From NCBI GenBank assembly GCA_002104905.1, contig MCFE01000343.1, positions 1-64,000 of the forward strand: a stretch of DNA of 64,000 nucleotides, given 5' to 3'. Source of the DNA: Basidiobolus meristosporus CBS 931.73. Taxonomy: Eukaryota > Fungi > Basidiobolomycota. The position numbers were made by a program, and so were the translations under genes. Shown here in pieces: positions 1,951 through 63,240 of this stretch (position 1 is the first letter of the stretch; each line of letters starts with the position of its first letter). The notes beneath the pieces are model-generated. The model was given only the letters and a program-made list of their open reading frames with translations. It did no database searches and had not been told where the DNA came from.

Positions 1951-2109
1951 TTAATGAAGTTGAATGGAGTATATTGCATCCTCCGTATCCCCCGTAGCGC
2001 CCATATCCCCAACGCCCTCCATAACCTTCTCGTCCCCAGTATCCACGGGCCTTCCAAAGGCACTGGCGACCATTAGTAGAGCACAAGCTGCGGTAGGTTG
2101 CTTGTACAT
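1951..2109 (-). pseudogene. GYRW-peptide copy A: internal deletion joins the signal peptide to the out-of-frame core (52-aa ORF MYKQPTAACALLMVASAFGRPVDTGDEKVMEGVGDMGATGDTEDAIYSIQLH)
   Basis: Signal region nearly identical to copy F; junction CCCGTGGAT|ACTGGGGACG skips the whole pro-region; YWGR..YGGRWGYGRYGGYGGC is still readable in another frame. Confidence 0.8.
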
Positions 2110-2582
2110 TGTGAATGTTGAACACTCGATTTATATACTAAACCAGGTTAATAGACATTGCATCTAGGACACTTCGCAGAATTGATGGGTTTCAGTCGAA
2201 TCTATGTTACAAGCATTAGGAAGCTTTGTGCTAGCTCTATTATACTGTTGTTAGTAAGATAAGGACAAGCATACTGATGAAGTAAGTATGTGTGTTTCCA
2301 CTAACGTGGCCGGTAAACATGCTGCGAAAAAGAAACACTTCGATTGACTGCCAAACTGTTGATACCCACCTACACATCCACTACCACAACCTATCTGACT
2401 TGTTATCCCTACTGCAGCTTGAGGAACTATGAAAACTGCAGCTTGATGAACTATACTAACATCACCGAGTGGCTTCTGTTAATTACGATGAGGCTTAGTA
2501 TGGGGCGTTGCCTATTGAAAGTATGAAGTTGAGCATGAAACATTGACAATGTGATGTTTATTTAAGGTAAGGATGTGGTGAA

Positions 2583-2989
2583 TTAGCAACCCCAGTCGCA
2601 TCCACCGTAGCCTCCATAGCCAACATAGCCACCATATCCCCAACTGCCTCCGTAGGCACCATAACGACCGTAACGTCCTCGTCTCCAGTATCTACTCCCC
2701 TGTATTCCATAGCCACCATATCTACCCCAAAGCTTGGCCTCTTCAGAGTCAGTGTCTTCACTTGTTCATCTGCCAACCCACCGCCTGACATTTGGCCGAA
2801 TATGTCGTCAAGAATGGCGCGAGTATCTTCGTCTTTTGTGGATTGAAATTGTGATATCATTTTGCCGCTTTGTGGGTCTCGGATGGAGATGGAAGCACTT
2901 GCTATATTGGTCACTTCTGTCTACACAGGAATCGCCATCGCATACGAAGCGATTAAGAGAGTAATGGTGATGAAGAAGTGCAGGTGCAT
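2583..2989 (-). pseudogene. GYRW-peptide copy B (copy-C subtype) with premature stop and frameshift
   Basis: ATG at 2989 gives MHLHFFITITLLIASYAMAIPV* (CAG->TAG at 2921-2923). A 13-nt deletion relative to copy C (GAAGTGTCTCCTA) shifts the core out of frame. Confidence 0.85.
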
Positions 2990-4187
2990 TTTGAATCTGA
3001 ATGAAGGAGTTGAGCGGATTGTACATATTAGCCACATATTGAGGATACCGCTGTTGATTGTGTGGACCAAATTTTGACTCCAGTTGCAGCCATCTCCATG
3101 TCCCAATGTGCCCCAGAAACGTAGCGTCCTAATCTCCTTCCGTTGCTGCCATAACTCCCTCCACATCTTCAGGAATGGAATGATGATGAAGCTTGATAAA
3201 CCTATCTAGTTACATCCAACTCCAGTATTTATTCCTAGCCGGTTACTCATGCCACAGCACGCCCTGAAGTATATATGGAGTCAGTGTATAGCTCAGCTGA
3301 ACGGTGGTATACGAAATATAAAGATTATTGTACTTCTGTACTTATACAATATATTCCCTTGTAGTGCATATAGTTCGTTTGATATTCGTATAAGCTGGTT
3401 CAAGTATTGAAGGATTCTTATCAAGCAACGTCCATTTATTAAGTGATCATTTTTAGTTGTATAGTCTCATTTGTGAATATCTCCAATGAGTTGTAGCAAG
3501 CGTGTTCAAATATTAGGACATTGTAGAAAACATATACCACAAAGTCCACCAACATGCTTTATGCTACAAAGGTATCTATTGTGAGGTCAGGAATAAGTTT
3601 ACCGACTTTATATTTTACCAGTAGAGCAAAAGCTATGGAAAGCTCTTATATTCACTTAGCAATAGTCAACATAGAACCAACATACTGTATGAATATATCC
3701 TATAGCTACCTGAAGTGGGAATACAAAGCAAGTCATGTGTTGGAATTTGCTATGAGTACCAAGAAATAATGCTTGTTGCTTGGCTGATGTCATGTTTATG
3801 CTTAGTGAGCTGAATAGTGAAAGCATCTCCGAAAGACTGCTGGAGTACTGTACAAAGCCTGCCAATCTCTCAGTATATCGAGACTTCAGCCATACCTGTG
3901 AAGGAAGAGCTGGGGATAGCAGTGAGTATTTCTGCTAAGAATGCTGAAAAGATAATGGTTCTTTGAAACCTTATGGACTTCTATACACCAGAGATATGAT
4001 GGTTGAAGTGTCAGTCAGTGATCAGAGTGTAAGTAATGATGTGATAGATACTCCAGCATGAGTGTATTTATCTACCATAGCCACCAAGGTTAGATACACT
4101 CCACAAAGCTCAGAGGGTAAAAAATCTTATCCTGTTTTGAGGCAGACGATTTTGAACCAGAATCCTCGTATGAAAGGCTTATCTACG

Positions 4188-4234
4188 CATCAACGGGGCA
4201 TCAACGGGGCATCAACGGGGCATCAACGGGGCAT
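4188..4234 (+). repeat. 11-bp tandem repeat (CATCAACGGGG)x4
   Basis: Four perfect units; the paralogous site at ~7418 has one unit plus a diverged one. Confidence 0.9.
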
Positions 4235-4506
4235 TATCTTTCAGCACCACTATCAGTCATATGCCTAACGGTAAGACTATAGAGATTTCAATGAGTTATT
4301 TCACTCTACGATTATATGCATGCATTCAATCAAAGCAACTATGCCATTTGTTTACGTATCGAAATCCAAGCCACACACACTATAACAAGTCATACACACG
4401 ATAAAGTTGTATATTATTCCCCTTCATTATCTTAGTAACTCTGCTTATCCCCTTATGGCTCTACACAATCTTCTTTAATATTCGATTCAACGGTGAAGTA
4501 CTCACA

Positions 4507-4764
4507 ATACGACTCAATACCGTTCTCTCCTCCTTAAACATGGTACTGCCAACCTGCGTATCAACCTTGACTCATGGCAGCACGTGACTGCCGGGCCATT
4601 GGATACCGTAAGCATAACTCCCGGACCACCCGGCACCTCTGCCAAAGCAATCCTGTACCTTTCTCTGCAAGATTGCAACAGGAAAAGGTTCAGGTTTGCT
4701 GCGATTACCTCGAAACTACGGAAAAGAAGTGACCGTTGGAGCAGTGAGAGTCTCTGCTAACTAG
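4507..4764 (+). pseudogene. Secreted partner protein pseudogene 1 (internal deletion, ATG->ATA)
   Basis: Aligns to 12284-12710 but lacks ~150 nt including the intron; start codon lost; frameshifted. Confidence 0.8.
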
Positions 4765-4889
4765 CATTCTCAATAAGAGTCATAATCACATGGCCATTCA
4801 CTATCAATAGATAAAATGCAACGGTACTTTATTCAAGCACACAGACAAGCTGTGCTGTTGGAGTGAATGAAAACCTTGATTCTTATTAT

Positions 4890-5292
4890 TCAGCAACCCC
4901 GGTCGCATCCACCGTACCCTCCATATCCCCCGTAGCGCCCATATCCCCATCGACCTCCATAACCACCGTAGCGAACGTAACGTCCTTGTCCCCAGTATCT
5001 CCCCCATAGCTCGGCCTCTTTAGGATCGCCCTCCTCTTCCTCGACTCCTTGGTCGGCGCCTTGCTTGCTCGAGAGAGTCTGATCGAACGTATTCCTTGAC
5101 ATCTGGCCGAGAATGCCATCGATATAATGTCAAATATTCTGCGCATCCTCTTCCTTGTTGGACGAGAACCTCTTCACCACTTGGCCGCTTTGTGGATCCC
5201 TATCGGGGATTTGTGCTTGACACATCCACAGGACTTCCAAAGGCACTGGCGACCATTAGTAGAGCACAGGCTGCGGTAAGTTGCTTGTACAT
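4890..5292 (-). pseudogene. GYRW-peptide copy D (copy-F subtype)
   Basis: 17-nt deletion (GTAGCGAGCGCGTCCAT) gives an early TAG; additional CGA->TGA; in-frame 30-nt deletion in the core between two AGATAC repeats. Confidence 0.85.
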
Positions 5293-5985
5293 TGTGAATG
5301 TTGAATACTCCAATAAAGCTCAGCACCAGCCTTTATATAAAGATACAGCATTTGGCCAAAACGGAGGTTTATAGATATCGCATCTTATGATGGGTTTCGG
5401 ACGAACGATGTATTGTATTTTGCATCTATTCTACAGGCATTAGCAAGATACAATAAGAGCTTCTAGAATAGTGAACTAGCTCTAGTATATACTAATTAAG
5501 CTAAGAACACATAAGCATTATATTAGTAGTAGTCAGGTCATTATATACTATAGAAAGCAGAATATAAAGTAAAATGGTTTGTACTAAGTACACTGATGGG
5601 CACTTTGATACTTTCCAAGGAAACTTTCATAATGATGAATCTCTATTGTGGACCAAGGAGACATAGATCCACTCACAACTACAGCACCACATGAATATGA
5701 GAAAGCTATAGATGGCATTCATGGAAGATCAGGCAAGTGTGAAGCGAAAAAAAAGACTTTACTAACAGTACACCATTAAAAGATAAAAATTGACAGCATT
5801 TAAAGGTAAAGATTTATGAAGATAATTGACTGCCAAACTGCAATAAGACTTATCTTTGCCTAGACATCCACCTTATCCATACACATATCTGACTTTCTCT
5901 CCCAACTGCGGCTTGGTAAACATCACTGATTAATTACGATGAGCATTGGCATTGTGATGTTTATTAAACGTAAGGATGTAGTGCA

Positions 5986-6405
5986 TTAGCAACCCCAGTC
6001 GCATCCACCATAGCCACCATATCCCCCGTAGCGCCCATATCCCCATCGGCCTCCGTAGCCACCATAGCGACCGTAACGTCCTCGTCCCCAGTATCTGCTC
6101 CCCCACCTTCCATAGCCACCATATCTACCCCAAAGCTCGGCCTCTTCAGAGTCAGTGTCTTCACTTGTAGGAGACACTTCTTCATCTGCCAACCCACCGC
6201 CTGACATTTGGCCGAATATGTCGTCAAGAATGGCGCGAGCATCTTCGTCTTTTGTGGACTGGAATTGTGTTATCATTTTGCCACTTTGTGGGTCCCGGAT
6301 GGAGATGGAAGCACTTGCTACATTGGTTGCTTCTGGCTGCACAGGGGTTGCCACCGCATATGAGGCAATTAGGAGAGCAAAGGTGACGGAGAAGTGCTTG
6401 TACAT
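5986..6405 (-). CDS. Intact secreted Gly/Tyr/Arg/Trp-rich prepropeptide, copy C (139 aa)
   Basis: ATG in TTCACAATG context with a TATA box upstream. MYKHFSVTFALLIASYAVA signal peptide, acidic pro-region ending EEAE, core LWGRYGGYGRWGSRYWGRGRYGRYGGYGGRWGYGRYGGYGGYGGCDWGC. Confidence 0.9.
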   Translation of the reverse strand: MYKHFSVTFALLIASYAVATPVQPEATNVASASISIRDPQSGKMITQFQSTKDEDARAILDDIFGQMSGGGLADEEVSPTSEDTDSEEAELWGRYGGYGRWGSRYWGRGRYGRYGGYGGRWGYGRYGGYGGYGGCDWGC

Positions 6406-6441
6406 TGTGAATCTGAATGAAGCACTTGAGCTGATTATGAG

Positions 6442-6449
6442 TATATATA
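6442..6449 (-). promoter_or_regulatory. TATA box of copy C
   Basis: TATATATA ~37 nt upstream of the ATG; equivalent position to TATATAAA upstream of copies F, D and H. Confidence 0.6.
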
Positions 6450-7773
6450 CCCGCACAGCATTAAAGACACTCAACTTTACCTCTGCTTTCAGTGGGAAGC
6501 GCTGCGGGTGATCCATTTGGTCGTTCAATAGAAACTGCTTAGTGGCTCTTCATTCAATCAAACACGCATAACACAACAAAAAGCTTAAAAAGATCATTTG
6601 TTTAGCAGATATGCTACAGGTTAGCCACCTCCATATTAACCATATGCTAATATTGATTGTGTGAACTTCCAGTTGCAGTCATCTCCATGTACCAATGTAT
6701 CCTGTCACTGTAGCGTCATTATCCCTTTCTGTTGATGCCATAGATTCCTTTATATCTTCATATTTACTGAAGAATGGCATGATTGATGACATCTCTTGAG
6801 CCAACTCCAGCATTTATTCCCAGTCGGTTACACATACAGTTAACCTGCCGCAGTAAATCCTGAAGTATATACTTGGCCGGTGTATGGTAAGCGGAATTAG
6901 TAAGCTCCAAGTTAGGCTGCGATAATATAAAAATTAGTGTACTTATCGAATATATTCTCACTGCATATAGCTTGTTGTAAGTTCATGCTAGCTGATATTG
7001 GAAGGGGTTGCGGTTCAAGCACTGAGAACTAGCTGCAATCATTATTACTAAATGACAACCATTGATCATAGCAATGAGTGCTGAGGTCAGAGTATTTCTG
7101 CTGAAAATACTGAGGAGATAATGGTTCTGTGAAAATGACTACGACAAACCTTATGATCTTCTATACACCAGAGATATGATGGTTTAAGTGTCAGTCAGTG
7201 ATCAGAGTGTAAGTAATAACTTGACTAGTAGCTTGATGTGATAGATACTCCAGCATGAGTGTATTGATCTACCATAGCCGTCATGGTTAATAAGCAAACG
7301 CTCAAAAGATACACTCCACAAAGCTCAGATGGTCACAAGATCTTGTCTTGGTCAAAATCCGTGTTTGAGGCAGACGATTTTGAACCAGAATCCTCGTATG
7401 AAAGGCTTATCTACGCATCAACGGGGCATCAACTGGGTATCATCTGTCAGCACCACTATCAGTCATATGCCTAACGGTAAGACTATAGAGATTTCAATGA
7501 GTTATTTCACTCTACGAACATATGCATGCATTCAATCAGGTTTTGCACTTATAGCAACTATGACGTTTTGAAGTCTTTCTATGTTACTAGTAGCAAGGAA
7601 CGGGCTCTCTTGGCTAGAAACTGAAGTAATCATATGCGTACTCCCAAGACTGAAAAAAGTACTCTAATAGAATATTCCCCTTCTCTGCCTGTCTCTCCTT
7701 GCCAACAGTGCTTATCCCCTTATAGCTCTATACAATCGTATTTAATATTCGATTTAACGGTAAAACACACACA

Positions 7774-8008
7774 GTGCGATTCAATACCGTTCTCTGCTCC
7801 TTAACCGTGGCACTGCTAACCCGCGTATCAACCTCGGCTCATGCTAGCATGTGACCGGTAGATACCGCAAGCATCACTTCCGGACCATCCAGCACCTCCG
7901 CTAAAGTAATCCTGTACCCTTCTCTGTAAGATTGCAACAGGAAAAGGAACAGGATTGTTGCGACTACCTCCAAATAACGGAAAAGAAGCAGGTGTCTCAG
8001 CCAACCAG
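7774..8008 (+). pseudogene. Secreted partner protein pseudogene 2
   Basis: Same internal deletion as pseudogene 1; ATG->GTG; internal TAG/TAA stops. Confidence 0.8.
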
Positions 8009-8136
8009 CATTCACAATAAGAGTTATAAAGAATACATCCCATCGAATTATACATACGGCCATTCACTATCGGTAGATAAAATGCGACAGTACTTTATTC
8101 GTTGCTGGAGTGAATGAAAGCCTTAACTCTTATTAT

Positions 8137-8318
8137 TCAGCAACCCCAGTCGCATCCACCATAGCCTCTATATCCCTACCGACCTCCATAACCACCGTAG
8201 CGACCGTAGCGTCCTCGTCCCCAGTATCTGCCCCTCCACCACCCATACCCGCCGTATCTCCCATATAGCTGGGCCTCTTCACGATTGCCATCCTCTTCCT
8301 CGACTCCTTGGTTGGCAT
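8137..8318 (-). pseudogene. GYRW-peptide copy E, 5'-truncated
   Basis: F-type pro-region end and core (EEEDGNREEAQLYGRYGGYG...) fused at ~8318 directly to sequence homologous to the upstream region of copies B/C (GCCATCTCCATGT). Confidence 0.8.
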
Positions 8319-9730
8319 TCGCCATCTCCATGTGTCCTATCACCGTATCCCCTTCCGTTGCTGCCACAACTCATATTCATTAAAGAGTGGCATGGTTGAT
8401 TAAAACATTTATCACATATCTTGAACCTATCTAGTTACATCCATGTATTCCTAGTCGGTTACGCATAAAGTCAACCTGCCGCAGTACATCCTCAAGTATA
8501 GGTCAGCTGAACGAGGAAAAAATAAGCTTAAAGTTAGGCTGCGATAGTATAAAATTAGTATACTTCCGTACTTATCTCACTGTGCATATGACTTGTTTGT
8601 AAGTAAGTTCATTGTAGGTGATATTGGCAGGGATTGCGGCTCAAGTACTGTTAACTGCCATAAGTATTCGGACTACTACTTTGTCATTCTTAGTTATATA
8701 GTGCCTGTTGTAAATATTTCAAATATTAAAGCATTGTGAAGAATGTTTGGTACTTGATATGGTACCTGAAGCTGACAGTGCAATACCGGTTCTGAAGTGT
8801 CCAGTCAACCAAGGGTTCTGGTGATATTTAAATGAGGAAAGCAGAGACCTATTGTACCTGGGCAGCCTGTAAGTAATTATCAATCATCAATTACATAAAG
8901 AACTGCTCACTAAGGAGTCGATGTAGGTTTAAAATCCCTACTGCAGGCTAACTCCAAGAGCCAACAGTATGGATCAAGGAGCTATCAGCACCATTCTATA
9001 TGCTGCAAGGTTATTTATTGCGAAAATATGAGTTGGAATGCTGCCTAGAACAAGTTTACTGAGCTTATGTTTTACCAGTAGCTTTAGAGCAATGGAGAGT
9101 TCCTACTCTTGCTTATCATTGTTCAAAATAACACCAAATTACTATATGAAGTAGAGTCCTATGCAGTACAATTGTATATCTGCTAGCTACCTGCAGTGGG
9201 AGTACAAAGCAAGTCATGTGTTGGTATTTGGCTTTCTGCAAAAGGTAATTAGTAACAAGAAATAATGACATGGCTTATATATGCTAGTGTGCTGTAATCA
9301 GCTAAACAGTACGGGCCTCTCTGAAAGACAGCTGGAGCACCGTACAAAGCATGCCAATGTCCCAGTATATTGAGACTTTAGCCATACCTGTGAAGGAAAC
9401 TGTTCATAACAGCAAGTGCTGAGGCCACTGCACTGCTGTTGAGAATACTGAAGAGATAATAATATTTTGAGTATGACTACAATGAACCTTATGATCGTCT
9501 ATGTAAGTATCAGTAGGTAATAACTTGGCAAGTGGAATGCTGCTAGCTTGATGTGATAGATGCTCCATCTTACCATCAGGCGCCAAAGTAAGTTTATTTA
9601 TCTATCATAGCCATCATGGTTATCGAACAAACGCTCAAAAGATACTCTCCACAAAGCTCAGATGGTCATAAGATCTTATCCGTGCTGTGGGGCAGACGAG
9701 AGGTTGAATCAGAATCCCCGTATGGAAGCC

Positions 9731-9927
9731 GGTGAGGGACTACCGTGGTAGGGAGTGATGGAGGTTCAATAGGACGTAATCCCCGTCCCTCATCGTGTAT
9801 CTCCCCGGTTTCGTCCCCACGTCTTTAGAAGAGTCTTCGAGAACCCCGACCTCGTGGAACCTTTCACTAAGCACCGATACTTACATTTCACTTGGGATAA
9901 ATACCTAAGTTGGTAAAGCCTTTCACC
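9731..9927. mobile_element. 197-bp insertion with short inverted ends (GGTGA...TCACC), MITE-like
   Basis: Absent from the paralogous sites at ~4170 and ~7400 (TATGAAAGGC|TTATCTAC); CpG-rich; no clear target-site duplication. Confidence 0.55.
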
Positions 9928-10325
9928 TTATCTACACATCAACTGGACGTGTCTTTCACCACCACTATCAGTAGTGGAAAGGCTATAAAGATTCGTGTTT
10001 TGTATAGATTTCCACAAGAGCCAGTGAGTTATTTCACTCTACAAATATATATGCATGCATTCAATCCGGTTTTACTCTTACAGCAAATAGAAACTCAAAT
10101 CACTCACACTATAACAAGTCGCTCATACTATACTATTGTAGTGCCCATACTTCACGTGATTTTAGTAGCAAGGAACGGGCTCTCTTGGCTAGAAACCGAA
10201 GTAAGGGTGATACTCCCCTTCATTGCCATGGTAACTCTGCCTATCTCTCCTTGCCTACCGTCCCTATCCCCTTATAGCTCTATACAATCCTCTTCAGTAT
10301 TCAATTCAACGGTGAAACACACACA

Positions 10326-10557
10326 ATGCGATTCAATAACGTTCTCTGCTCCTTAACCGTGGTACTGCTAACCCGAGTATCGATATCAGCTCTTGCCGGC
10401 ACGTGACCTGCGGACCGGCAGATACCGCAAGCATCACTTCCGGACCACCCAGCACCTCCGGCAAAGCAATCCTGTACCTTTCCTTGCAAGATTGCAACTA
10501 CCTCGAAGCAACGGAAAAGAAGTGACCGTTGGAGCAGTGAGAGTCTCTGCTAACTAG
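10326..10557 (+). pseudogene. Secreted partner protein pseudogene 3
   Basis: ATG kept (MRFNNVLCSLTVVLLTRVSISALAGT*), same deletion/frameshift, plus a further deletion near the C-terminus. Confidence 0.8.
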
Positions 10558-10682
10558 CATTCTCAATAAGAGTCACAATCACATGCCCATTCACTATCAA
10601 TAGATAAAATGCAACGATACTTTATTCAAGCACACAGACAAGCTGTGTTATTGGAGTGAATAAAAGCCTTGATTCTTATTAT

Positions 10683-11132
10683 TCAGCAACCCCAGTCGCA
10701 TCCACCATACCCTCCATATCCCCCGTAGCGCCCATATCCCCATCGACCTCCATAACCACCGTAGCGACCGTAGCGTCCTCGTCCCCAGTATCTGCCCCTC
10801 CGCCGCCCATATCCACCGTATCTCCCCCATAGCTGGGCCTCTTCTGGATTGCCCTCCTCTTCCTCGACATCTTGGTCGGCGTCTTGCTTATCCGAGAGGG
10901 TCTGATCGAACGTATTTCTTGACATCTGGCCGAGAATGCCATCGATGTAGTGTCGAATATTCTGCGCATCCTCTTCCTTGTTGGACGAGAACCTCTTCGC
11001 CACTTGGCCACTTTGTGGATCCCTATCGGAGATGGACGCGCTCGCTACATTTGTGCTTGACACATCTACGGGACTTCCAAAGGCACTGACGGCCATTAGT
11101 AGAGCACAAGCTGCGGTAAGTTGTTTGTACAT
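10683..11132 (-). CDS. Intact secreted Gly/Tyr/Arg/Trp-rich prepropeptide, copy F (149 aa)
   Basis: MYKQLTAACALLMAVSAFG signal peptide, a KR dibasic site, acidic pro-region ending EEEEGNPEEAQ, 49-aa core with 21 G, 10 Y, 10 R, 4 W ending CDWGC. TATATAAA at 11172-11179; AATAAA (minus strand) at 10621-10626. Confidence 0.9.
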   Translation of the reverse strand: MYKQLTAACALLMAVSAFGSPVDVSSTNVASASISDRDPQSGQVAKRFSSNKEEDAQNIRHYIDGILGQMSRNTFDQTLSDKQDADQDVEEEEGNPEEAQLWGRYGGYGRRRGRYWGRGRYGRYGGYGGRWGYGRYGGYGGYGGCDWGC

Positions 11133-11171
11133 TGTGAAAGTTGAATACTCCAATCAAGTTCAGCACCAGCC

Positions 11172-11179
11172 TTTATATA
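11172..11179 (-). promoter_or_regulatory. TATA box of copy F
   Basis: TATATAAA 40 nt upstream of the ATG; a TATAAA core is conserved at ~5331, ~13189 and ~15062. Confidence 0.65.
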
Positions 11180-11486
11180 CAGATACAAGATGGAGGTTGA
11201 TTGATATCGCATCTAGGAAGCTTCAATCAAATGATGTAGTATATTTCGGAGGCAACCACCGCAGCCAAAGTACAAACACTCGATTTCTGTTAACAACAAC
11301 ACTAGTCGTGGTATAGAGATTTCTATACTATGTTATATGAAAGTGGCAAGTATCTCGTAAACGGAAATGGGTAGATAAACAGCGAGAGCCTCAAAAGAGA
11401 GCCTCAAAAATTGTCATTTATTTTGCATGATTTAGAGTTGCGGATGATCGCAATATTCGTAGTAAGCTTAACAGCATGGTGTATTA

Positions 11487-11695
11487 AATTAGCATCCCAA
11501 ACAAGCCCTCCAAGTTCCCAGCGACCATCATGGTCCCCGAAGTGACCATAACGTCCTCGTCACCTGTTCACTCTGGTGCGAGCGTCTTCTTCCTACACAC
11601 CGCTTCCGGGCTTTGGAAAAGAGATGGACACACTTGCCACAATGGCTGTACCGGAATTTAAAAAGCATTAAAACGATGGAAAAGTACTTGCGCAA
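11487..11695 (-). pseudogene. Diverged GYRW-family remnant G1
   Basis: TTG-CGC-AAG-TAC-TTT-TCC resembles MYKHFS; AATGT(A/G)GCAAGTG segment conserved with copy C; core remnant RGRYGHFGDHDGRW. Confidence 0.6.
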
Positions 11696-12198
11696 GGTGA
11701 AAACCAAAGGATAAACGGAGCCTCCTCTTGTGTATCCTTAACATTGTCAATCCTATACCACCATTTGTCGTTCATCATCAAAAGGCATCACCACCACCTG
11801 CCTTCCTTCATCAGGAGACGAATGAGTGGGCTACCTATGTGTAACACTCAAAATTCCCTCGAACAAACCAAGAATGCACTCAATATTTATAGCCTCAGTG
11901 TAACAGAAACTACAACACTTTGTTTACGCCTAGATCGCACTCACCGTATTCCACGTAAGTCTCGCTATGATACTAATGGAAGTGAGCAGGCAAAGCATCC
12001 GCGCCACATATGCAGGCCAACATTAGTCATCCTGGTGTTATTGAACAATACAAGGATCAGCAGTTTCTCCTAAAAAAGAAGTGCTTAGCCCAAAGGCAAT
12101 TTGGAGTGAATGCGATACTACGGTATATAGTATAAAATATTCCGCTTCATCATCATGGTAGCTCAGCCTGTCTCTCCTTACAAGCCCGGCTAATTCCC

Positions 12199-12205
12199 TA
12201 TAAAA
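12199..12205 (+). promoter_or_regulatory. TATA box of the intact partner gene
   Basis: TATAAAA ~80 nt upstream of the ATG; retained at 14136-14142 and ~15652. Confidence 0.6.
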
Positions 12206-12283
12206 TCGCTTGTAATGCTTACCTTCTTCATCAGGAATACACACAAAAGCACTCACAGAAGCACACACACAAAAGCACTCACA

Positions 12284-12710
12284 ATGCGATTCAATACCGT
12301 TTTCTGCTCCTTAGCCATGGCACTGCTAGCCTGCACAACAACTTCAGCACAATCCTCTAGAGCGTTACTAAGTATGTAATCAGTATATAACTCAACTAGC
12401 CGCAACCAGCGAGCCTTACTAACCAAATACTTACAATGTAGAATTGGTAAATACTCCTGAAGATACTGCACAACAACTACCATTCTCAGCTGGCTCATGC
12501 CAACGCGTGACCTTTGGACCGGTGGATACTGCCAGCATCACCCCCGAATCACCAAGTATCTCTGCCCAAGCCATCTTGTATCCTTCTCTGCAAGATTGTA
12601 ACAATCGCAGGAACAGGATTGCTGCTATAACATCCAATCAACTCGAGGTACATATCGCGAAGAACGGAAAAGAAGTGACTGTTGGAGCAGTAAGAGTATC
12701 TGTCAGCTAG
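12284..12710 (+). CDS. Intact 118-aa small secreted protein, two exons (12284-12371, 12442-12710), function unknown
   Basis: Signal peptide MRFNTVFCSLAMALLACTTTSA; 70-nt intron GTATGT...TACTAAC(12417-12423)...TAG joins in frame (A+AA=Lys) to LVNTPEDTAQQLPFSAGSCQRVTFGPVDTASITPESPSISAQAILYPSLQDCNNRRNRIAAITSNQLEVHIAKNGKEVTVGAVRVSVS*; AATAAA at 12718-12723. Confidence 0.85.
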
Positions 12711-13105
12711 CATCCTCAATAAACCGCATTGTTCAGTCAGGAGTTACAAAGAATGTATCCCATTAGATATACACAGCCAGAATGAAAGAGCAACTGTAAC
12801 AGACTAGTGAACGAAAGCCTAGAATATGCCTACATATCATTATGATTATCCAGCAAAAGGTGAATGGAGTGTATCCTCCGTAGCAACCGCAACGTCTTTG
12901 TGATACTAATAGCAAGGCACGGGCTCTCTTGGCTAGAATCTGAAATAAGCGTGATGAATTGGCATCATATCCGTTCTTCCAATAATCAAATATTCCCCTT
13001 CATTGTCATGGTAACTCTGCCTGTCTCTCCTTGCCAACAGTGCTTATCTCCTTATAGCTTTATACAATCCTCTTCAATATTCAATTCAGCGGTGAAACAC
13101 ACACA

Positions 13106-13167
13106 ATGCAATTCAAATCCGTTCTCTGCTCCTTAACCGTGGTACTGCTAACCCACATATCTAACCC
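13106..13167 (+). pseudogene. Partner-gene 5' fragment fused to an F-type promoter (the intervening GYRW gene is deleted)
   Basis: Signal-peptide codons run into AATAAAGCTCAGCACCAGCCTTTATATACAG, which elsewhere lies just upstream of the D/H ATG. Confidence 0.75.
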
Positions 13168-13524
13168 TAATAAAGCTCAGCACCAGCCTTTATATACAGA
13201 TACAGCATTTGGATAAGACGGAGGCTTATAGATATCGCATCTAGGAAGCTTCAGTCAAATGATGTAGTATATTTCGGAGGCAACCACCGCAGCTGAAGTA
13301 TAAATACTCGATTTCTGTTTGCCTTCTACCGCAATAAACAATGCTAGTCATGGTATAAAGATGCCTATACTGTGTTTCATGAAAGTGGTAGGTACTTCTC
13401 TTATAACCGGAAATGGGTAGAAAAGTAGCGAGAGCCTCCAAAGGGTGCCACAAAAATCGGCCTTTATTTTGCATGATTTAGAGTTGTGTTTGATGACAGT
13501 ATTAATAGTAAGCTTAACAGCATG

Positions 13525-13680
13525 ATGTGATGGATTAGCAGCTCAAACAAGAGAGTATCTTCTCTGGTTGGCTGGAACCTACACACCATTTCCCGGCTTT
13601 GGAGAAGAGATGAACACACTTACCACATTGACTGTACCGGAATTTAAAAGCATAAGGACGATGGAAAAGTGCTTGCGCAT
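13525..13680 (-). pseudogene. Diverged GYRW-family remnant G2 (MRKHFSIVLMLLNSGTVNVVSVFISSPKPGNGV*)
   Basis: Paralog of G1 at the same position in the duplicated block; N-terminus resembles copy C; core lost. Confidence 0.6.
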
Positions 13681-14194
13681 GGTAAATACCAAAGGATAGA
13701 TGGGGCCTCCTCTTGTGTATCTTTTACGTTATCAATCCCATACTGGTCCTCTTTTTCTTTGACCACCACTATCTGTCTTCCTTCATCAGGGGATGAATGA
13801 GTGAGCTACAAATGGGCAATACTAAGCATGCTGAAGTGTAGCAGAAACCACATCACTTTATTTAAGCCTAAATTGCACTCACCATATTTGGCGTTACGAT
13901 ACTAATGGAAGTGAGGAGGCAACGCATCCGTGCCACATATCATCCGTGCCACATATGCAGGCCAACACTAGTCATCCTGGTGCAATCGAACAATACAAGG
14001 ATCATCACTTGAGTTCACTAGTTTCTCCTTAAAAATAAAGTGCTTAGCGCAAAGCGAATTTGGCAAATAGTATAGAATATTCTGCTTCATCATGGTAGCT
14101 CAGCCTGTCTCTCCTTACAAGCCGGGATAATTTCCTATAAAATCGCTTGCAATGCTCACCTTCTTCATCAGACATACACACAGAAAAACACACA

Positions 14195-14474
14195 ATGCGA
14201 TTCAATACCGTTTCTGCTCCTTGACCATGGCACTGCCAACCCGCATATCAACCTCGGCTCATATCAGCACGTGATCTGCGAACCGGTAGATACCGCAAGC
14301 ATCACTTCCGGACCTCCCAGCACCTTCGCCAAAGCGATCAGGTACCCTTCCATACAGGATTGCAACCGTAAAAGGAACAGGATTGCTACAATTACCTCCA
14401 AACAACTCTAGATACACATCGCGAAGTACGGAAAAGAAGTGACCGTTGGAGCAGTGAGAGTTTCTACCAGCTAG
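14195..14474 (+). pseudogene. Secreted partner protein pseudogene 5
   Basis: 1-nt deletion after codon 6, the shared internal deletion, and GAG->TAG; promoter is of the intact-gene type. Confidence 0.8.
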
Positions 14475-14599
14475 CACTCTCAATAAGAGTCATAATCACA
14501 TGGCCATTCACTATCAATAGATAAAATGCAACGGTACTTTATTCAAGCACACAGACAAGTGGTGTTGTTGGAGTGAATAAAAGCCTTGATTCTTATTAT

Positions 14600-15023
14600 T
14601 CAGCAACCCCAGTCGCATCCACCATACCCTCCATATCCCCCGTAGCGTCCATACCCCCACCGACCTCCGTAACCACCGTAGCGTCCTCGTCCCCAGTATC
14701 TGCCCCTCCGCCGCCCATATCCCCCGTATCTCCCCCATAGCTCGGCCTCTTGAGGATCGCCCTCCTCTTCCTCGACTCCTTGGTCGGCGTCTTGCTTATC
14801 CGAGAGAGTCTGGTCGAAAATATTCCTTGACATCTGGCCGAGAATGCCATCAATATAGTGCCGAATATTCTGCGCATCCTCTTCCTTGTTTGACGAGAAC
14901 CTCTTCACCACTTGGCCGCTTTGCGGGTCCCTATTGGAGATTTGTGCTTGACACATCCACGGGACTTCCAAAGGCACTGACGACCATCAGTAGAGCACAA
15001 GCTGCGGTAAGTTGTTTGTACAT
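14600..15023 (-). pseudogene. GYRW-peptide copy H
   Basis: Same 17-nt deletion as copy D, giving TAG after codon 30; downstream frame otherwise open with a core lacking one GRY unit. Confidence 0.8.
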
Positions 15024-15688
15024 GGTGAATGTTGAGCAATCCAATAAAGCTCAGCACCAGCCTTTATATACAGATACGAGATGAAGGTTAACAGACATCG
15101 CATTTAGGAAGCTTCACGAAATTGATGGGCGTCAGCCGAATAATGTAGTATATTTCGAAGTACAAACACGTGATTTCTGTCACCATAATGCTGGCGATGG
15201 TAGAGAGATTCCTATACCATGTTATATGAAAGTGGCTAGTATTTCTCTAGTAAACGGAAATGGGTAGAAATGCAGCGAGAGCCTCAAAAGAGAGCCTCAA
15301 AAATTGGCCTTTATCTTGCATAACTAAAGGATACCTCTTGTATATCTTTTCGTTATCAATCACATACTGGTTATCGTGTTCTTTCACTACCACTAAGAGA
15401 TGAACACATGGGCGATACTTATGTAACCGCTCAATATTATCCTCCATCCTTATACCCCGAACAAACTATGTATGCACTTAATACTAATAGCCTCAGTGTA
15501 ACAGAAACTACGACGCTTTATTTACACCTAGATCGCGCTCACCAGTGCTTATATTCGGGGTGAATACAATATTATGGTATAAATATAAGATATTCCGCTT
15601 CAGCATCATGATAGCTCAGCCTGTTTTTCCTTACAAGCCGGGCTAATTCCATATAAAATCGCTTGTAATGTTCACCTTATTCATCAGC

Positions 15689-15745
15689 CAACTTCAGCAC
15701 AATCCTCTGGTGCACTACTAAGTATGTAACCAGTATATAACACCA
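15689..15745 (+). pseudogene. Partner-gene fragment (end of exon 1 and intron donor only)
   Basis: CAACTTCAGCACAATCCTCT...CTAAGTATGTAA matches 12339-12390; preceded by the intact-type promoter block. Confidence 0.7.
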
Positions 15746-16068
15746 CAAGTCGCAGCTAAAGTGACCATTATGTTGTGGTAAGTTCACGAATTAAATCAGA
15801 ATTTTGACTGTTGTTTCTTATCAATAGGATTCAAGTACAGCCCAACTATGATGTTGAATCAATTGTGGCTGAGTCGTCATACTATTTAATCGCTATATTG
15901 TGATACTTAAATTGCATCTATCTATACACACTATGTGTACACACTATCTATACGTATTACAGATTAAGCTACCCGAGAATGCCTTATACCTCGCTGGGCA
16001 CGCACCTTTATAACACTTTGTGAATTCTAATAAACACAACGCTGTTCCTTCTGCAACAGGATGTTTAT

Positions 16069-16335
16069 TCATTCGCCCAAGCCAGCTTGGGATGTGCTAG
16101 CTTTAGGTTCAAACACAATGGCTGTCAAGGCTTCACAAGCAGGCGAAGTCTCCAGAGGCTCGTCTATATTCCTACGCATAGCTGGCTTCCCTTTAAACTT
16201 TGCTACTACTTCACCATTCTCCATCGTTAGCTCCTGCAGCCCATGTGTTGCTGAGAATACCTCGCACACCACGCGAAGAACCAGCATGGCTCTTTCTCTA
16301 TAGATACGGTCCTGGGCTTGCACCATGGTTTGCAT
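16069..16335 (-). CDS. Uncharacterised 88-codon ORF, possibly an exon or decayed gene
   Basis: Protein-like composition, CpGs retained, unique sequence; the upstream continuation appears broken by a stop and frameshift. No family recognised. Confidence 0.3.
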   Translation of the reverse strand: MQTMVQAQDRIYRERAMLVLRVVCEVFSATHGLQELTMENGEVVAKFKGKPAMRRNIDEPLETSPACEALTAIVFEPKASTSQAGLGE

Positions 16336-17339
16336 AACAGTGTCAAGCCATTGTCCCTTTATAGCGAAAACTTCACTCCAATATGATCAGATGACGGCTC
16401 GAACAATGGCCCTTTGTAAGTTCAATTAAAACTGGATTTCAACCATTGTTTCAACCATTGTTTAGTATTGATAATATGCCAACAACGATATGAGGCAATC
16501 CCGTTCAAGTTACATGCCAAGTAATGATGATGCTGAATTTTATTTATATAGCTTGAGCCAATTGGGGCGTGGGAGCTGAGTCACCGTTCTGTTGGAGAGG
16601 GGCTTGCTGTTGTGAACAGAACGGTGAGTTGACAGTAAATTGAGAATATTGAATGCTCGACATTAGCTTATATACATGGCTAATTGATATGCAGTCAAAT
16701 GATGTAGTACATTCCGGAAACAACCACTGCACAAACACTCGCTCATGAAAACAAATCACAATGCAAGTCAAGAAAAGAGATTCCTATATTAAATCAAGTC
16801 GAGCAAAGAGATTTCTAACAACTACCATGGCCCTTCATCACACTATGCATGCATTCAATCCGGCCTAACATTTATGGTTGTAAAGAAAGCGCAACTATAT
16901 CACTTGATCTTTGCTCACCATGGCACTAGTAAAGTCTTATCCGCAATGAGCAGACAGCATCAGTAGATACCCATAGCTATTCACTCTTTCTTAGCCTGCA
17001 AGTCAACTCAAATTAGTATGTAGTCGATGTCTAGCTTGACTGGACGTAACTAGTGACTGTTGATTGCTCGAATAAAGCTTAGCACTGTTTTCGGCCAAGA
17101 TGGAGGTTGATTGAAATCCCATCCATGAAACTCCTCGGAATTGGTGGGTTTTAGTTGAATGATGTAGTGTATTTTGGAGGAAAACACCGCAGCTAGCATA
17201 CAACCACTTTTCCTTCTGTCTTCCACAGCAATAAGCGACTAAGCTAGCCATAGCAGAGAGATTCTTGTGTGAAAATGTCAAATATTGCTCACGTAAACAA
17301 ATACAAGTGGGCAAGCAGCAAACAGCACGGCATAGTAGG

Positions 17340-17614
17340 TTAGTAATTCAAAACACACCTAAAATTGCATCCGCACCCTCCATATTTCCAACAACCACTA
17401 TAGTACTCATGACATTGTCGCCACCAATATTTGCCCTGCCCTTTCTGGCACAAGCGTCTTCATCCTTGGTTGGCTGGGACCTATGTACATCTCTCAGGCT
17501 TTGAGGAAGAGATGAAGGCACTTGCCCCATTGGTATCCTTTGGCTGCACCTGAGTCCATACTAAAATCCTCAGACCATTAGGAACACACGGATGATGGGA
17601 ATATGCTTGTGTTT
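17340..17614 (-). pseudogene. Diverged GYRW-family remnant I
   Basis: QVQPKDTNGASAFIS matches PVQPEATNVASASIS and TKDEDA matches copy C; start codon lost; several stops and frameshifts. Confidence 0.75.
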
Positions 17615-63223: not shown

Positions 63224-63240
63224 CAGGCTTGCAACTGGAC
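63196..63240 (+). promoter_or_regulatory. -1 programmed ribosomal frameshift signal (G GGA AAC plus 11-bp stem-loop)
   Basis: Slippery heptamer 63196-63202 in the gag frame, 6-nt spacer, GTCCAGTTGCA / TGCAACTGGAC perfect stem with a 10-nt loop; the -1 frame is the protease frame. Confidence 0.85.

What the first reader, a model, noticed from the sequence alone, without database searches (positions are those of the whole stretch)
1951..17614. Amplified family of secreted prepropeptides with a cationic Gly/Tyr/Arg/Trp core ending in CDWGC
Seen: two intact genes (5986-6405, 10683-11132) and about eight decayed copies. Each intact gene encodes a signal peptide, a conserved TNVASASISxRDPQSG..EDA..I...GQMS segment, an acidic linker ending EEA(E/Q), and a 49-aa core made almost only of G/Y/R/W (net about +7 and +9) with a terminal CxxxC. 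Known: an anionic pro-piece masking a cationic peptide is typical of antimicrobial/toxin precursors; YGGYG motifs define the nematode NLP-29/caenacin antimicrobial peptides; G/Y/R/W composition typifies the mussel adhesive Mfp-3. Inference: a processed antimicrobial/effector peptide or a spore adhesive/coacervating cuticle-binding peptide that I do not recognise as a described fungal family.
Basis: partly seen in the sequence, partly recalled or inferred. Interest (0 to 1): 0.85.

Follow-up and report, generated by a model that had tools for sequence, protein, structure and literature searches.

The report
Amplified secreted cationic Gly/Tyr/Arg/Trp peptide precursors
The frog-gut fungus Basidiobolus meristosporus carries dozens of copies of an undescribed small gene for an exported protein in which an acidic front half balances a strongly conserved, positively charged Gly/Tyr/Arg/Trp tail; it looks like an antimicrobial-peptide precursor, but expression, cleavage and activity are all untested.

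Summary
On the minus strand the window holds 2 intact genes (5986-6405, 10683-11132) and 8 decayed copies between 1978 and 17610.

The window comes from Basidiobolus meristosporus CBS 931.73. About 40 members are annotated there on at least 12 contigs, all as "hypothetical".

No Pfam, NCBIfam, PDB, metagenome or literature match exists. A profile search of 1.84 billion proteins found family-level matches only in Basidiobolus.

New here:
- The 49-aa core is the most constrained part of the gene: 42.5 synonymous against 13.5 non-synonymous events, omega about 0.1.
- The family is one branch of a wider Basidiobolus superfamily. Two tandem families with (WGRGR)n cores share the signal peptide, the N-terminal A-x-A-S-[IV]-S motif and an identical junction, PEEAE-LWGR. 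That junction is kept at the amino-acid level despite synonymous differences.
- The pro-piece charge (-11/-12) roughly cancels the core charge (+7/+9).
- The one B. ranarum relative found has the prepro part but no core.

Best reading (about 45%): a charge-masked precursor cut near EEA(E/Q)/LWGR to release a disordered, membrane-active cationic peptide. The main rival is an adhesive, coacervate or wall material.

The scan had already noted this family (s1-197461, s1-202207) and an Arg/Trp array (s1-190795) on other contigs.

The parts
10683..11132 (-). Intact type-B gene g2 (149 aa, no intron). Signal peptide codons 1-19 = 11076-11132; pro-piece codons 20-100 = 10833-11075; cationic core codons 101-149 = 10686-10832; stop codon 10683-10685.
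   Evidence: identical to P0017 of B. meristosporus CBS 931.73
5986..6405 (-). Intact type-A gene g1 (139 aa). Signal peptide 6349-6405; pro-piece 6136-6348; core 5989-6135; stop codon 5986-5988.
   Evidence: identical to P0029
11171..11179 (-). TATA box (TATATAAAG) 47 nt before the ATG of g2. It lies at the same distance in 16 of the 17 intact type-B copies (51 nt in the other one).
10621..10626 (-). AATAAA signal 56 nt after the g2 stop codon, conserved in type-B copies.
6444..6449 (-). TATA box (TATATA) 44 nt before the ATG of g1, conserved in type-A copies.
5960..5965 (-). AATAAA signal 20 nt after the g1 stop codon.
14600..15023 (-). Full-length type-B copy, broken: a 17-nt deletion at CDS nt 83 shifts the frame after codon 27, and a 9-nt in-frame deletion lies in the core. 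93% nt identity to g2.
4890..5292 (-). Full-length type-B copy, broken by the same 17-nt deletion, with an additional 30-nt deletion in the core.
2583..2989 (-). Full-length type-A copy, broken by a 13-nt deletion at CDS nt 225. 89% nt identity to g1.
8137..8317 (-). 3' half only (profile nt 252-450: linker end plus core). The same truncated form is annotated elsewhere as a 62-aa protein (P0038).
1978..2109 (-). Internally deleted remnant: the first 69 nt of the CDS joined to part of the core.
17448..17610 (-). Decayed 5' remnant (profile nt 5-173).
13558..13679 (-). Decayed 5' remnant (profile nt 2-161).
11510..11671 (-). Two small decayed pieces (profile nt 44-166 and 344-401).
12284..12710 (+). 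Neighbouring gene X, a small secreted protein of about 113 aa. Exon 1 is 12284-12372, the GT..AG intron is about 12373-12441, and exon 2 runs to 12710. Decayed pieces of X lie tail-to-tail beside other peptide copies at 14256-14474, 4568-4764, 7853-7973 and 10504-10557. Whether X belongs functionally to the peptide system is unknown.

Best explanation
These genes encode charge-masked prepropeptides of a superfamily so far found only in Basidiobolus. Shown: each is an intronless gene with a TATA box and an AATAAA signal. It encodes an N-terminal hydrophobic leader with small residues at -3/-1 (AVA|T, AFG|S), a conserved pro-segment, a fast-evolving acidic linker, an invariant junction EE(A/T)x-LWGR, and a 49-aa Gly/Tyr/Arg/Trp core ending in C-x3-C. 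The core is the most strongly constrained part and is predicted to be disordered. The pro-piece charge (-11/-12) roughly cancels the core charge (+7/+9). Inferred: the leader directs export. The acidic pro-piece keeps the cationic tail harmless and soluble during transit. An unidentified non-dibasic endoprotease then cuts at or next to the conserved junction and frees the 49-mer, whose two Cys close a small C-terminal loop. The free peptide binds anionic microbial envelopes through Arg and aromatic side chains, as Trp/Arg-rich and Gly/Tyr-rich antimicrobial peptides do. This would give the gut-dwelling fungus a ribosomal weapon against bacteria or other fungi. Tandem and segmental amplification would supply dosage, with constant birth and death of copies.
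For: Identity and spread:
- g1 and g2 are exact matches to B. meristosporus CBS 931.73 proteins.
- About 40 members are annotated on at least 12 contigs.
- 27 intact CDS were collected from 9 loci. In the eight other loci there are 36 full-length and 26 partial copies.

Selection:
- Pairwise NG86, type A against type B: core omega 0.059 (14.5 synonymous against 3.8 non-synonymous differences), pro-segment 0.067, linker 0.37, signal 0.53.
- Events counted on a tree: core 42.5 synonymous against 13.5 non-synonymous, ratio 0.10, P=3e-15. The other regions give 0.32-0.66.

Gene signals:
- The TATA box lies at -44 in 7 of 10 type-A copies and at -47 in 16 of 17 type-B copies.
- AATAAA lies at +20 in 9 of 10 type-A copies and at +56 in 13 of 17 type-B copies.

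Charge:
- Pro-piece against core is -12/+7 (A), -11/+9 (B), -15/+13 (RW2) and -14/+15 (RW1).

Superfamily:
- The profile search also recovered P0040 and P0041.
- Their loci hold tandem arrays with (WGRGR)n cores.
- These share the leader and the A-x-A-S-[IV]-S motif. hhalign on the prepro parts alone gave E=3.9e-5 and probability 70%.
- They also share the junction [DN]PEEAE-LWGR-[YWF]G, with different codons in each family.
- A junction kept while the core changes is what a recognition or cleavage site predicts. Arg/Trp repeats are the classical minimal antimicrobial pharmacophore (established knowledge).

Structure and ecology:
- AlphaFold gives pLDDT about 40 for the core.
- Basidiobolus is a dominant herptile-gut fungus whose abundance co-varies with bacterial community structure (PMC10964425).
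Against: - There is no expression evidence: no RNA run was listed.
- Cleavage, secretion and activity are untested.
- No dibasic (Kex2) site lies at the junction, and no protease is known for EEA(E/Q)/L.
- The residue just before Leu varies (E, Q, D, G), so the exact cut site cannot be placed.
- Many host-defence peptide families diversify their mature part (nlp-29 cluster, PMC2453101). Here the mature part is almost frozen, which fits a material or a fixed molecular target equally well.
- The pro-segment is itself conserved, so it may do more than mask charge.
- Part of the core's uniformity reflects recombination between subfamilies. The chimera L005:10001-10420 has a type-A prepro part with a type-B core and 3' flank.
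Confidence: 0.45

Rival explanations
1. Extracellular material. The protein, cleaved or not, is a building block of a spore or hyphal surface layer, or of the adhesive of the capilliconidium. Arg-aromatic (cation-pi) contacts would drive condensation or coacervation once the acidic half is removed or neutralised, possibly followed by Tyr cross-linking.
For: - The core is Gly/Tyr/Arg/Trp only and is predicted to be disordered. Established knowledge links this composition with phase separation and with wet adhesives.
- The near-frozen core and high copy number fit an abundant material made in bulk.
- The matched opposite charges within one chain suit self-coacervation.
- Basidiobolus makes adhesive capilliconidia (PMC13370150, listed; general mycological knowledge).
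Against: - The sister families keep the junction and charge balance but have no Tyr, so Tyr/DOPA chemistry cannot be the shared function.
- No tyrosinase or peroxidase gene was seen next to the arrays.
- There is no match to any characterised structural glycine-rich family: Pfam GRP scores E=0.6, 11 bits against a cut-off of 30.
- There are no stage-specific expression data.
Confidence: 0.25
2. Uncleaved secreted zwitterionic disordered protein, or Arg-rich cell-entering effector. It would act on the animal or insect host or on nucleic acids or polyanions (for example mucins), not on microbes.
For: - No recognisable protease site lies at the junction.
- The pro-segment is under purifying selection of its own.
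- Arg-rich tails are typical of cell-penetrating sequences (established knowledge).
Against: - The conserved junction across families with different cores is more simply explained by processing.
- The linker between the two conserved parts evolves almost freely: omega 0.37 to 1.4.
- No host-related domain is present.
Confidence: 0.12
3. Precursor of a heavily modified ribosomal natural product (RiPP), with the conserved pro-segment acting as a leader recognised by tailoring enzymes.
For: - The pro-segment and junction are conserved.
- UniRef labels two members 'RSAM-associated Gly-rich repeat protein'.
- Basidiobolus is rich in specialised metabolism (PMC10964425).
Against: - The label could not be reproduced: NCBIfam gives no match for those very proteins.
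- No tailoring-enzyme gene was found in 64 kb or in the eight other loci. The only Pfam hits there are a kinase and retroelement pieces.
- The family has no Kex2-flanked repeats like fungal KEPs or dikaritins (PMC7329392).
Confidence: 0.05
4. Non-functional amplified ORF: a low-complexity reading frame carried along by a segmentally duplicating repeat, over-called by gene prediction.
For: - More than half of all detectable copies are broken or partial.
- Broken copies were themselves duplicated: both broken type-B copies in the window carry the same 17-nt deletion.
- The arrays lie beside large satellites and near contig ends.
Against: - The strong excess of synonymous over non-synonymous change, strongest in the low-complexity core, is not expected for a non-coding or neutral repeat.
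- Promoter and poly(A) signals are conserved.
- 27 intact copies exist.
Confidence: 0.03

Closest known systems
Basidiobolus (WGRGR)n precursor arrays (L010:8924-20168 and L011:1899-3666; P0041, P0050, P0051, P0040): unnamed, annotated as hypothetical
   Same: Same species. Same order of parts: leader, A-x-A-S-[IV]-S motif, acidic linker, junction [DN]PEEAE-LWGR-[YWF]G, Gly-spaced cationic aromatic tail. They also form tandem arrays and show the same charge balance.
   Different: The core is Arg/Trp/Gly only (34-39 aa, +13/+15) and has no Tyr, no Cys and no CDWGC. The pro-piece is longer. In RW1 a KR site is followed by a His/Lys-rich insert of variable length.
Caenorhabditis NLP-29 cluster and caenacin (CNC) Gly/Tyr-rich antimicrobial peptides
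   Same: Small secreted Gly/Tyr-rich peptides with YGGYG-type repeats, encoded by recently expanded tandem clusters (PMC2453101).
   Different: No sequence relationship: no nematode protein reached E<=1e-3 in the exhaustive profile search. From my own knowledge, the nematode precursors lack a long conserved acidic pro-piece and the C-x3-C end. The nlp-29 cluster shows positive selection (PMC2453101), whereas here the core has omega about 0.1.
Animal antimicrobial-peptide precursors with an anionic pro-piece (alpha-defensins; anuran dermaseptin/brevinin-type prepropeptides)
   Same: Signal peptide, then an acidic pro-piece that offsets the charge of a C-terminal cationic peptide (established knowledge; for example PMC2803202 and PMC7073735, listed). 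The C-terminal disulfide loop recalls the 'Rana box'.
   Different: Not homologous. Those are released at dibasic or defined protease sites, and the mature parts fold as beta-sheet or helix. Here there is no dibasic junction and the mature part is Gly-rich and disordered. The loop is C-x3-C.
Trp/Arg-rich antimicrobial peptides (indolicidin, tritrpticin, lactoferricin core, synthetic RW repeats)
   Same: Arg plus aromatic residues as the active principle. The sister-family cores are natural Gly-spaced RW repeats.
   Different: Those are 6-13 residues long and unrelated in origin. The window's core is 49 aa, dominated by Gly/Tyr, with only 4-5 Trp.
Mussel foot protein Mfp-3 and other Gly/Tyr/Arg-rich wet adhesives
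   Same: Small, secreted, cationic, disordered, rich in Gly/Tyr/Arg/Trp (my own knowledge).
   Different: There is no evidence for DOPA formation, and those adhesives have no acidic pro-piece. There is no sequence match, and the sister cores lack Tyr.
Plant glycine-rich protein family (Pfam PF07172 GRP)
   Same: Signal peptide plus a Gly-rich region.
   Different: Scores 11 bits against a cut-off of 30, E=0.6, for one gene and nothing for the other.

Membership tests
Basidiobolus charge-masked cationic-tail superfamily (defined here: GYRW types A and B plus RW1 and RW2) | N-terminal leader followed within about 10-15 residues by the A-x-A-S-[IV]-S motif | tested here: met
   Alignment A3. hhalign on the prepro parts only gave local E=3.9e-5 and probability 70% over leader plus motif.
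Basidiobolus charge-masked cationic-tail superfamily (defined here: GYRW types A and B plus RW1 and RW2) | Acidic linker ending in the junction (P/S)EE(A/T)x-LWGR-(Y/W/F)G | tested here: met
   Present in all 27 intact GYRW copies and all 11 RW copies. The codons differ between families.
Basidiobolus charge-masked cationic-tail superfamily (defined here: GYRW types A and B plus RW1 and RW2) | C-terminal Gly-spaced Arg/aromatic tail whose charge is offset by the pro-piece | tested here: met
   Pro-piece against core: -12/+7, -11/+9, -15/+13, -14/+15. One long RW1 variant gives -4/+15 because of its His/Lys insert.
Nematode NLP-29 / caenacin antimicrobial peptides | Detectable sequence relationship to nematode NLP/CNC proteins | tested here: not met
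   The exhaustive profile search of 1.84 billion representatives returned no nematode protein at E<=1e-3. Of the six non-Basidiobolus hits, five were checked and are Gly/Tyr low-complexity matches: one fly 'suex-1-like' protein and unnamed metagenome or assembly proteins. P0045, the weakest hit, was not checked.
Nematode NLP-29 / caenacin antimicrobial peptides | Induction by infection or wounding, and antimicrobial activity | not testable with these tools
   No RNA run was listed and no assay is possible.
Antimicrobial-peptide precursor with anionic pro-piece (functional class, not a homology family) | Signal peptide, acidic pro-piece and cationic C-terminal peptide with compensating charge | tested here: met
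Antimicrobial-peptide precursor with anionic pro-piece (functional class, not a homology family) | Proteolytic release of the cationic peptide | not testable with these tools
   Only indirect evidence: the junction is conserved across families. No dibasic site is present.
Antimicrobial-peptide precursor with anionic pro-piece (functional class, not a homology family) | Growth inhibition of microbes by the released peptide | not testable with these tools
   Needs synthesis and an assay.
Pfam PF07172 GRP (plant glycine-rich proteins) | Score above the gathering threshold (30 bits) | tested here: not met
   11.2 bits, E=0.6 for g2; no hit for g1 or for the core alone.
rSAM-associated Gly-rich repeat protein (UniRef label on P0020 and P0024) | Match to the NCBIfam/TIGRFAM model behind the name | tested here: not met
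   NCBIfam release 20 gives no family for P0020, P0024 or g1, and only an unrelated E=0.23 hit for g2. No radical-SAM gene was seen nearby.
Fungal Kex2-processed repeat proteins (KEPs; PMC7329392) | Signal peptide followed by several repeats separated by KR sites | tested here: not met
   The precursor carries a single core. There is no KR at the junction, and the only KR (type B, residues 46-47) is not conserved in type A or in many type-B copies. The family's accessions are absent from the supplement text that is held.

The most novel reading that the evidence does not exclude
Basidiobolus has evolved its own ribosomal host-defence-like system. It would be a superfamily of charge-masked, intrinsically disordered Arg/aromatic/Gly peptides (GYRW-CDWGC and WGRGR types), released at a new non-dibasic processing motif (EEA-x / LWGR) by a dedicated, still unknown protease. 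Dozens of gene copies would produce these peptides to shape the bacterial community of the amphibian and reptile gut. This would be the first linear cationic antimicrobial-peptide precursor system with an anionic pro-piece described in an early-diverging fungus, and a gene-level handle on the reported Basidiobolus-bacteria co-structuring.
Probability: 0.35. Interest if true: 0.8.

Novelty: new variant of a known kind. Interest (0 to 1): 0.62.

Why it matters
If the peptides are released and active, they would be a new source of simple Gly-spaced Arg/Tyr/Trp antimicrobial sequences. They would also reveal a new pro-peptide processing signal in fungi. They would give a testable molecular explanation for how a dominant gut fungus of amphibians and reptiles interacts with gut bacteria; so far only its non-ribosomal and horizontally acquired metabolism has been discussed (PMC10964425). 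If they prove to be a material instead, they would be a natural one-chain acid/base coacervate system from a fungus. Either way, about 40 annotated 'hypothetical' genes plus two unrecognised sister arrays become one defined family, and several mis-framed gene models can be corrected.

Tried and rejected
- Expression: the look-up of sequencing runs (kind rna) on 5700-11400 listed no run. None was listed, which does not mean none exists.
- Pfam, NCBIfam and the PDB sequence profile gave no family.
- The UniRef name 'RSAM-associated Gly-rich repeat protein' was not reproduced.
- ESM Atlas: the first two calls failed. The third gave one lead at 0.83, an oomycete 'glycine-rich protein' cluster, which is within the chance range the tool states. 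I did not pursue it.
- Metagenome scan: 64 pattern matches, none confirmed by tblastn.
- AlphaFold on two alignments gave mean pLDDT 47-49. Only the leader helix and a helix at about 52-80 recur. The models are too poor for fold search, so none was run. Complex prediction was not used, because a disordered pro-piece/core contact is not a fair test.
- RiPP idea: Pfam scans of the other larger ORFs of the window found only a retroviral-type aspartyl protease fragment and a sub-threshold DUF.
- KEP paper: B. meristosporus has the most KEPs of 1461 fungi (PMC7329392). However, the held supplement text does not contain this family's accessions or the WGRGR string, so no link can be claimed.
- Telomere repeats: none in the window.
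- B. ranarum: its only relative found (P0039, L009:3185-3532) stops before any core, and no core is readable downstream in any frame. The contig carrying the B. ranarum orthologue of gene X has no peptide gene. Absence from that species cannot be concluded, because the assembly is fragmented and no eukaryotic genome search was available.
- Literature: no paper on Basidiobolus glycine-rich, secreted or antimicrobial peptides was found.

Full report
**1. What is in the window**

All copies lie on the minus strand.

- A nucleotide profile built from 27 intact family CDS finds eight more copies.
  - Three are full-length but broken: 14600-15023, 4890-5292 and 2583-2989.
  - Five are fragments: 8137-8317, 1978-2109, 13558-13679, 11510-11671 and 17448-17610.
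- The two broken type-B copies carry the same 17-nt deletion at CDS nt 83. The type-A copy has a 13-nt deletion at nt 225. Broken copies have therefore been duplicated along with the array.
- A self-comparison shows duplicated units of about 0.5-1.2 kb around each copy and two clear subfamilies.
- With upstream alternative starts, the two intact genes are among only five ORFs of 150 aa or more in the 64 kb.

**2. Source organism and spread**

- g2 and g1 are letter-for-letter identical to P0017 and P0029. These are listed without accession, which is how the tool marks the window's own proteins. They sit in clusters whose other members are all Basidiobolus meristosporus CBS 931.73.
- The word-based search found 12 clusters, all from that strain and all "hypothetical". 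The two main clusters hold 28 and 11 members on at least 12 contigs.
- Eight further loci were fetched. They are 84-96% identical to the window in blocks and hold head-to-tail arrays.
  - 25 more intact CDS were collected.
  - These loci hold 36 full-length and 26 partial copies.
- Several JGI models translate the +1 frame of the core (GDTGDEDVTVATVVME...) or start after the 17-nt deletion (MCQAQIS...). These are annotation artefacts or pseudogenes.

**3. Anatomy**

- Alignments of 10 and 15 members confirm the following invariant or nearly invariant elements:
  - a leader with K3 and a 13-15-residue hydrophobic stretch ending AVA|T or AFG|S, read by the -3/-1 rule because no SignalP was available;
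  - the motif T-N-V-A-S-A-S-I-S, then P-Q-S-G, (E)DA, I.GQ(M)S;
  - a variable acidic linker;
  - E-E-(A/T)-x, then L-W-G-R-Y, and a 49-aa tail ending CDWGC.
- Among the 27 intact copies there are only 12 distinct cores. Ten copies share one core and five share another.
- Core composition is G21 Y10 R8-10 W4-5 C2. Core net charge is +7 (type A) and +9 (type B). Pro-piece net charge is -12 and -11.
- The promoter region has a TATA box, at -44 in 7 of 10 type-A copies and at -47 in 16 of 17 type-B copies. Both types share the ATG context TTCACAATG.
- AATAAA follows the stop codon, at +20 in 9 of 10 type-A copies and at +56 in 13 of 17 type-B copies.
- AlphaFold on two alignments gives mean pLDDT 47-49. 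Only the leader helix and a helix at about 52-80 recur, and the core scores about 40, meaning it is predicted to be disordered.

**4. Selection**

| Region | Pairwise NG86, type A vs B | Events on an ML tree |
|---|---|---|
| Core | omega 0.059 (14.5 syn vs 3.8 non-syn differences) | 42.5 syn vs 13.5 non-syn, ratio 0.10, binomial P=3e-15 |
| Conserved pro-segment | 0.067, with saturated dS | 0.34 |
| Linker | 0.37 (1.4 within type A) | 0.44 |
| Leader | 0.53 | 0.66 |

- The low-complexity tail is therefore the most strongly protein-constrained part, not a drifting repeat.
- Caveats:
  - Pairs are not independent.
  - Parsimony undercounts change on the long A-B branch.
  - Recombination occurs. 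L005:10001-10420 (P0032) combines a type-A prepro part with a type-B core and 3' flank. This also explains why dS in the core (0.59) is lower than in the pro-segment.

**5. Relatives elsewhere, and the main new result**

- A profile of 15 members was scored against 1.84 billion representative proteins. It gave only 15 hits at E<=1e-3.
- Nine are Basidiobolus proteins: eight from B. meristosporus and one from B. ranarum.
- Of the other six, five were checked and are Gly/Tyr low-complexity matches (a fly "suex-1-like" protein and unnamed metagenome or assembly proteins). P0045, the weakest hit, was not checked.
- Three Basidiobolus hits are informative.
- P0039 from B. ranarum carries the leader and pro-segment (36% identity in the alignment). 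It stops before any cationic tail, and none is readable downstream.
- P0040 and P0041 from B. meristosporus end in ...DPEEAE-LWGR followed by WGRGR repeats.
- Their loci hold further tandem arrays:
  - L010:8924-20168 has at least nine copies at a spacing of about 1.2 kb (RW1). These carry a KR site and a His/Lys-rich insert of variable length, and the core is 39 aa with charge +15.
  - L011:1899-3666 has two copies (RW2), with a 34-aa core of charge +13 that begins LWGRFGGRRRWGRG. This is intermediate between the RW1 core and the type-B core LWGRYGGYGRRRGRYWGRG.
- The families align collinearly.
- With the cores and junction removed, profile-profile comparison still finds the leader plus A-x-A-S-[IV]-S region (local E=3.9e-5, probability 70%).
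- The junction [DE]-x-T-[DN]-[PS]-E-E-A-[EQ]-L-W-G-R-[YWF]-G is identical in amino acids but uses different codons in each family: GAA GAG against GAG GAA, GCC/GCT, CTT/CTA/CTC, AGA/CGC.
- Charge compensation holds in all four groups.
- The window's family is therefore one branch of a Basidiobolus superfamily. The junction and the charge balance are kept while the cationic tail is exchanged.
- The scan had already noted the GYRW family on two other contigs (s1-197461, s1-202207) and an Arg/Trp array (s1-190795). The homology link between them was tested here.

**6. Surroundings**

- No tailoring-enzyme or protease gene was found. Other ORFs of the window give only a retroelement protease fragment.
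- A small secreted-protein gene X lies at 12284-12710 on the plus strand. It has two exons and an intact leader.
- Decayed pieces of X lie tail-to-tail next to four peptide copies. This agrees with note s1-212609.
- X has a B. ranarum orthologue (P0054). Over 85 codons pS is 0.82 and pN is 0.15, so X is a real, constrained gene. That contig carries no peptide gene.
- X has no Pfam match. Its relation to the peptide is unknown.
- Large satellites (34/102-bp and 98-bp units) fill 26.4-31.9 kb and 43.2-53 kb. The same satellite borders another array, at L002:1-1649.

**7. Interpretation**

- Firmly shown: this is a real gene family under purifying selection, found so far only in Basidiobolus. It has an export-type leader and the stated architecture, and it turns over rapidly by birth and death of copies.
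- Inferred (about 45%): it is a charge-masked precursor cut near EEA-x/LWGR that releases a disordered cationic peptide acting on microbial envelopes.
- Arguments for this reading:
  - the junction is kept across families whose tails differ;
  - acidic and basic halves are matched;
  - the sister tails are Arg/Trp repeats, the classical antimicrobial pharmacophore (established knowledge);
  - the fungus lives in the gut, and its abundance co-varies with bacterial community structure (PMC10964425).
- Arguments against:
  - there are no data on expression, cleavage or activity;
  - there is no dibasic site at the junction;
  - the mature part is frozen, unlike the positively selected nlp-29 cluster (PMC2453101);
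  - the pro-segment is conserved in its own right.
- The main rival (about 25%) is a coacervating or adhesive surface material. The Tyr-free sister cores argue against Tyr chemistry as the shared principle, but not against cation-pi condensation.
- The RiPP reading and the "junk ORF" reading are poorly supported.

**8. Comparison with known families**

- This is not a member of the nematode NLP/CNC family, the plant GRP family (PF07172), fungal KEPs or the rSAM-associated Gly-rich family. In each case a defining feature was tested and not met.
- It works most like animal antimicrobial-peptide precursors with an anionic pro-piece, but it is not homologous to them.
- I rate it a new variant of a known kind. 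Function remains untested.

**9. Limits**

- No RNA run was listed, so expression is open.
- No eukaryotic genome collection could be searched, so the family's range within Basidiobolaceae is unknown.

Noticed in passing
window 26397-31935; 43246-47293; 48439-52950; also L002:1-1649: Very large minisatellites: a 34/102-bp unit in about 163 copies, with GC skew up to +0.45; a 98-bp unit in 41 copies; and the 34/102-bp unit again in the opposite orientation. The same 34-bp satellite borders another peptide array (L002). Most arrays lie within 0-20 kb of contig ends, so the family sits in satellite-rich regions that are hard to assemble.
   Followed up: partly
window 12284-12710 (+); decayed pieces at 14256-14474, 4568-4764, 7853-7973, 10504-10557: Gene X encodes a two-exon small secreted protein of about 113 aa (P0052/P0053) with no Pfam match. 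It is co-duplicated tail-to-tail with the peptide genes. It is conserved in B. ranarum (P0054: 76% identity, pS 0.82, pN 0.15), where no peptide gene lies beside it.
   Followed up: partly
L010:8924-20168 and L011:1899-3666 (B. meristosporus contigs MCFE01000402.1 and MCFE01001163.1): Tandem arrays of secreted precursors with (WGRGR)n tails. In L010 the JGI models fuse neighbouring copies into multi-exon genes of about 400 aa with a faint 'Phosphodiest' hit. The simple one-ORF reading gives 197-220-aa precursors. The RW1 copies also carry KR followed by a histatin-like His/Lys-rich insert whose length varies between copies.
   Followed up: partly
L005:10001-10420 (P0032): A chimeric copy with a type-A leader and pro-piece joined to a type-B core (GRRRG) and type-B 3' flank. 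This is direct evidence for recombination or gene conversion between the subfamilies inside the core.
   Followed up: partly
P0002, P0006, P0009-P0012, P0037; window 14600-14977: Many annotated 'proteins' of the strain are frameshifted copies read in the +1 frame of the core (…GDTGDEDVTVATVVMEV…), or leaderless ORFs starting MCQAQIS after the shared 17-nt deletion. These are likely pseudogene models.
   Followed up: partly
window 4187-4234 (11-bp unit GCATCAACGGG x 4.4); L007:15371-15616: An 11-bp microsatellite between the copies reads as GINGASTGHQR repeats. In one paralogous locus it was called as an 81-aa gene, which is probably not a gene.
   Followed up: no
window 63229-63666 (+): An ORF with a retroviral-type aspartyl protease domain (RVP_2, E=7e-6). 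This is a retrotransposon remnant at the far end of the window.
   Followed up: no
L009:3185-3532 (B. ranarum JASJQH010008265.1): P0039, the only relative found in B. ranarum, keeps the leader, the I-A-S-S-S-V-S motif and the helix region. It ends in an acidic stretch without any cationic tail. It is either a tail-less ancestral form or a truncated copy.
   Followed up: partly
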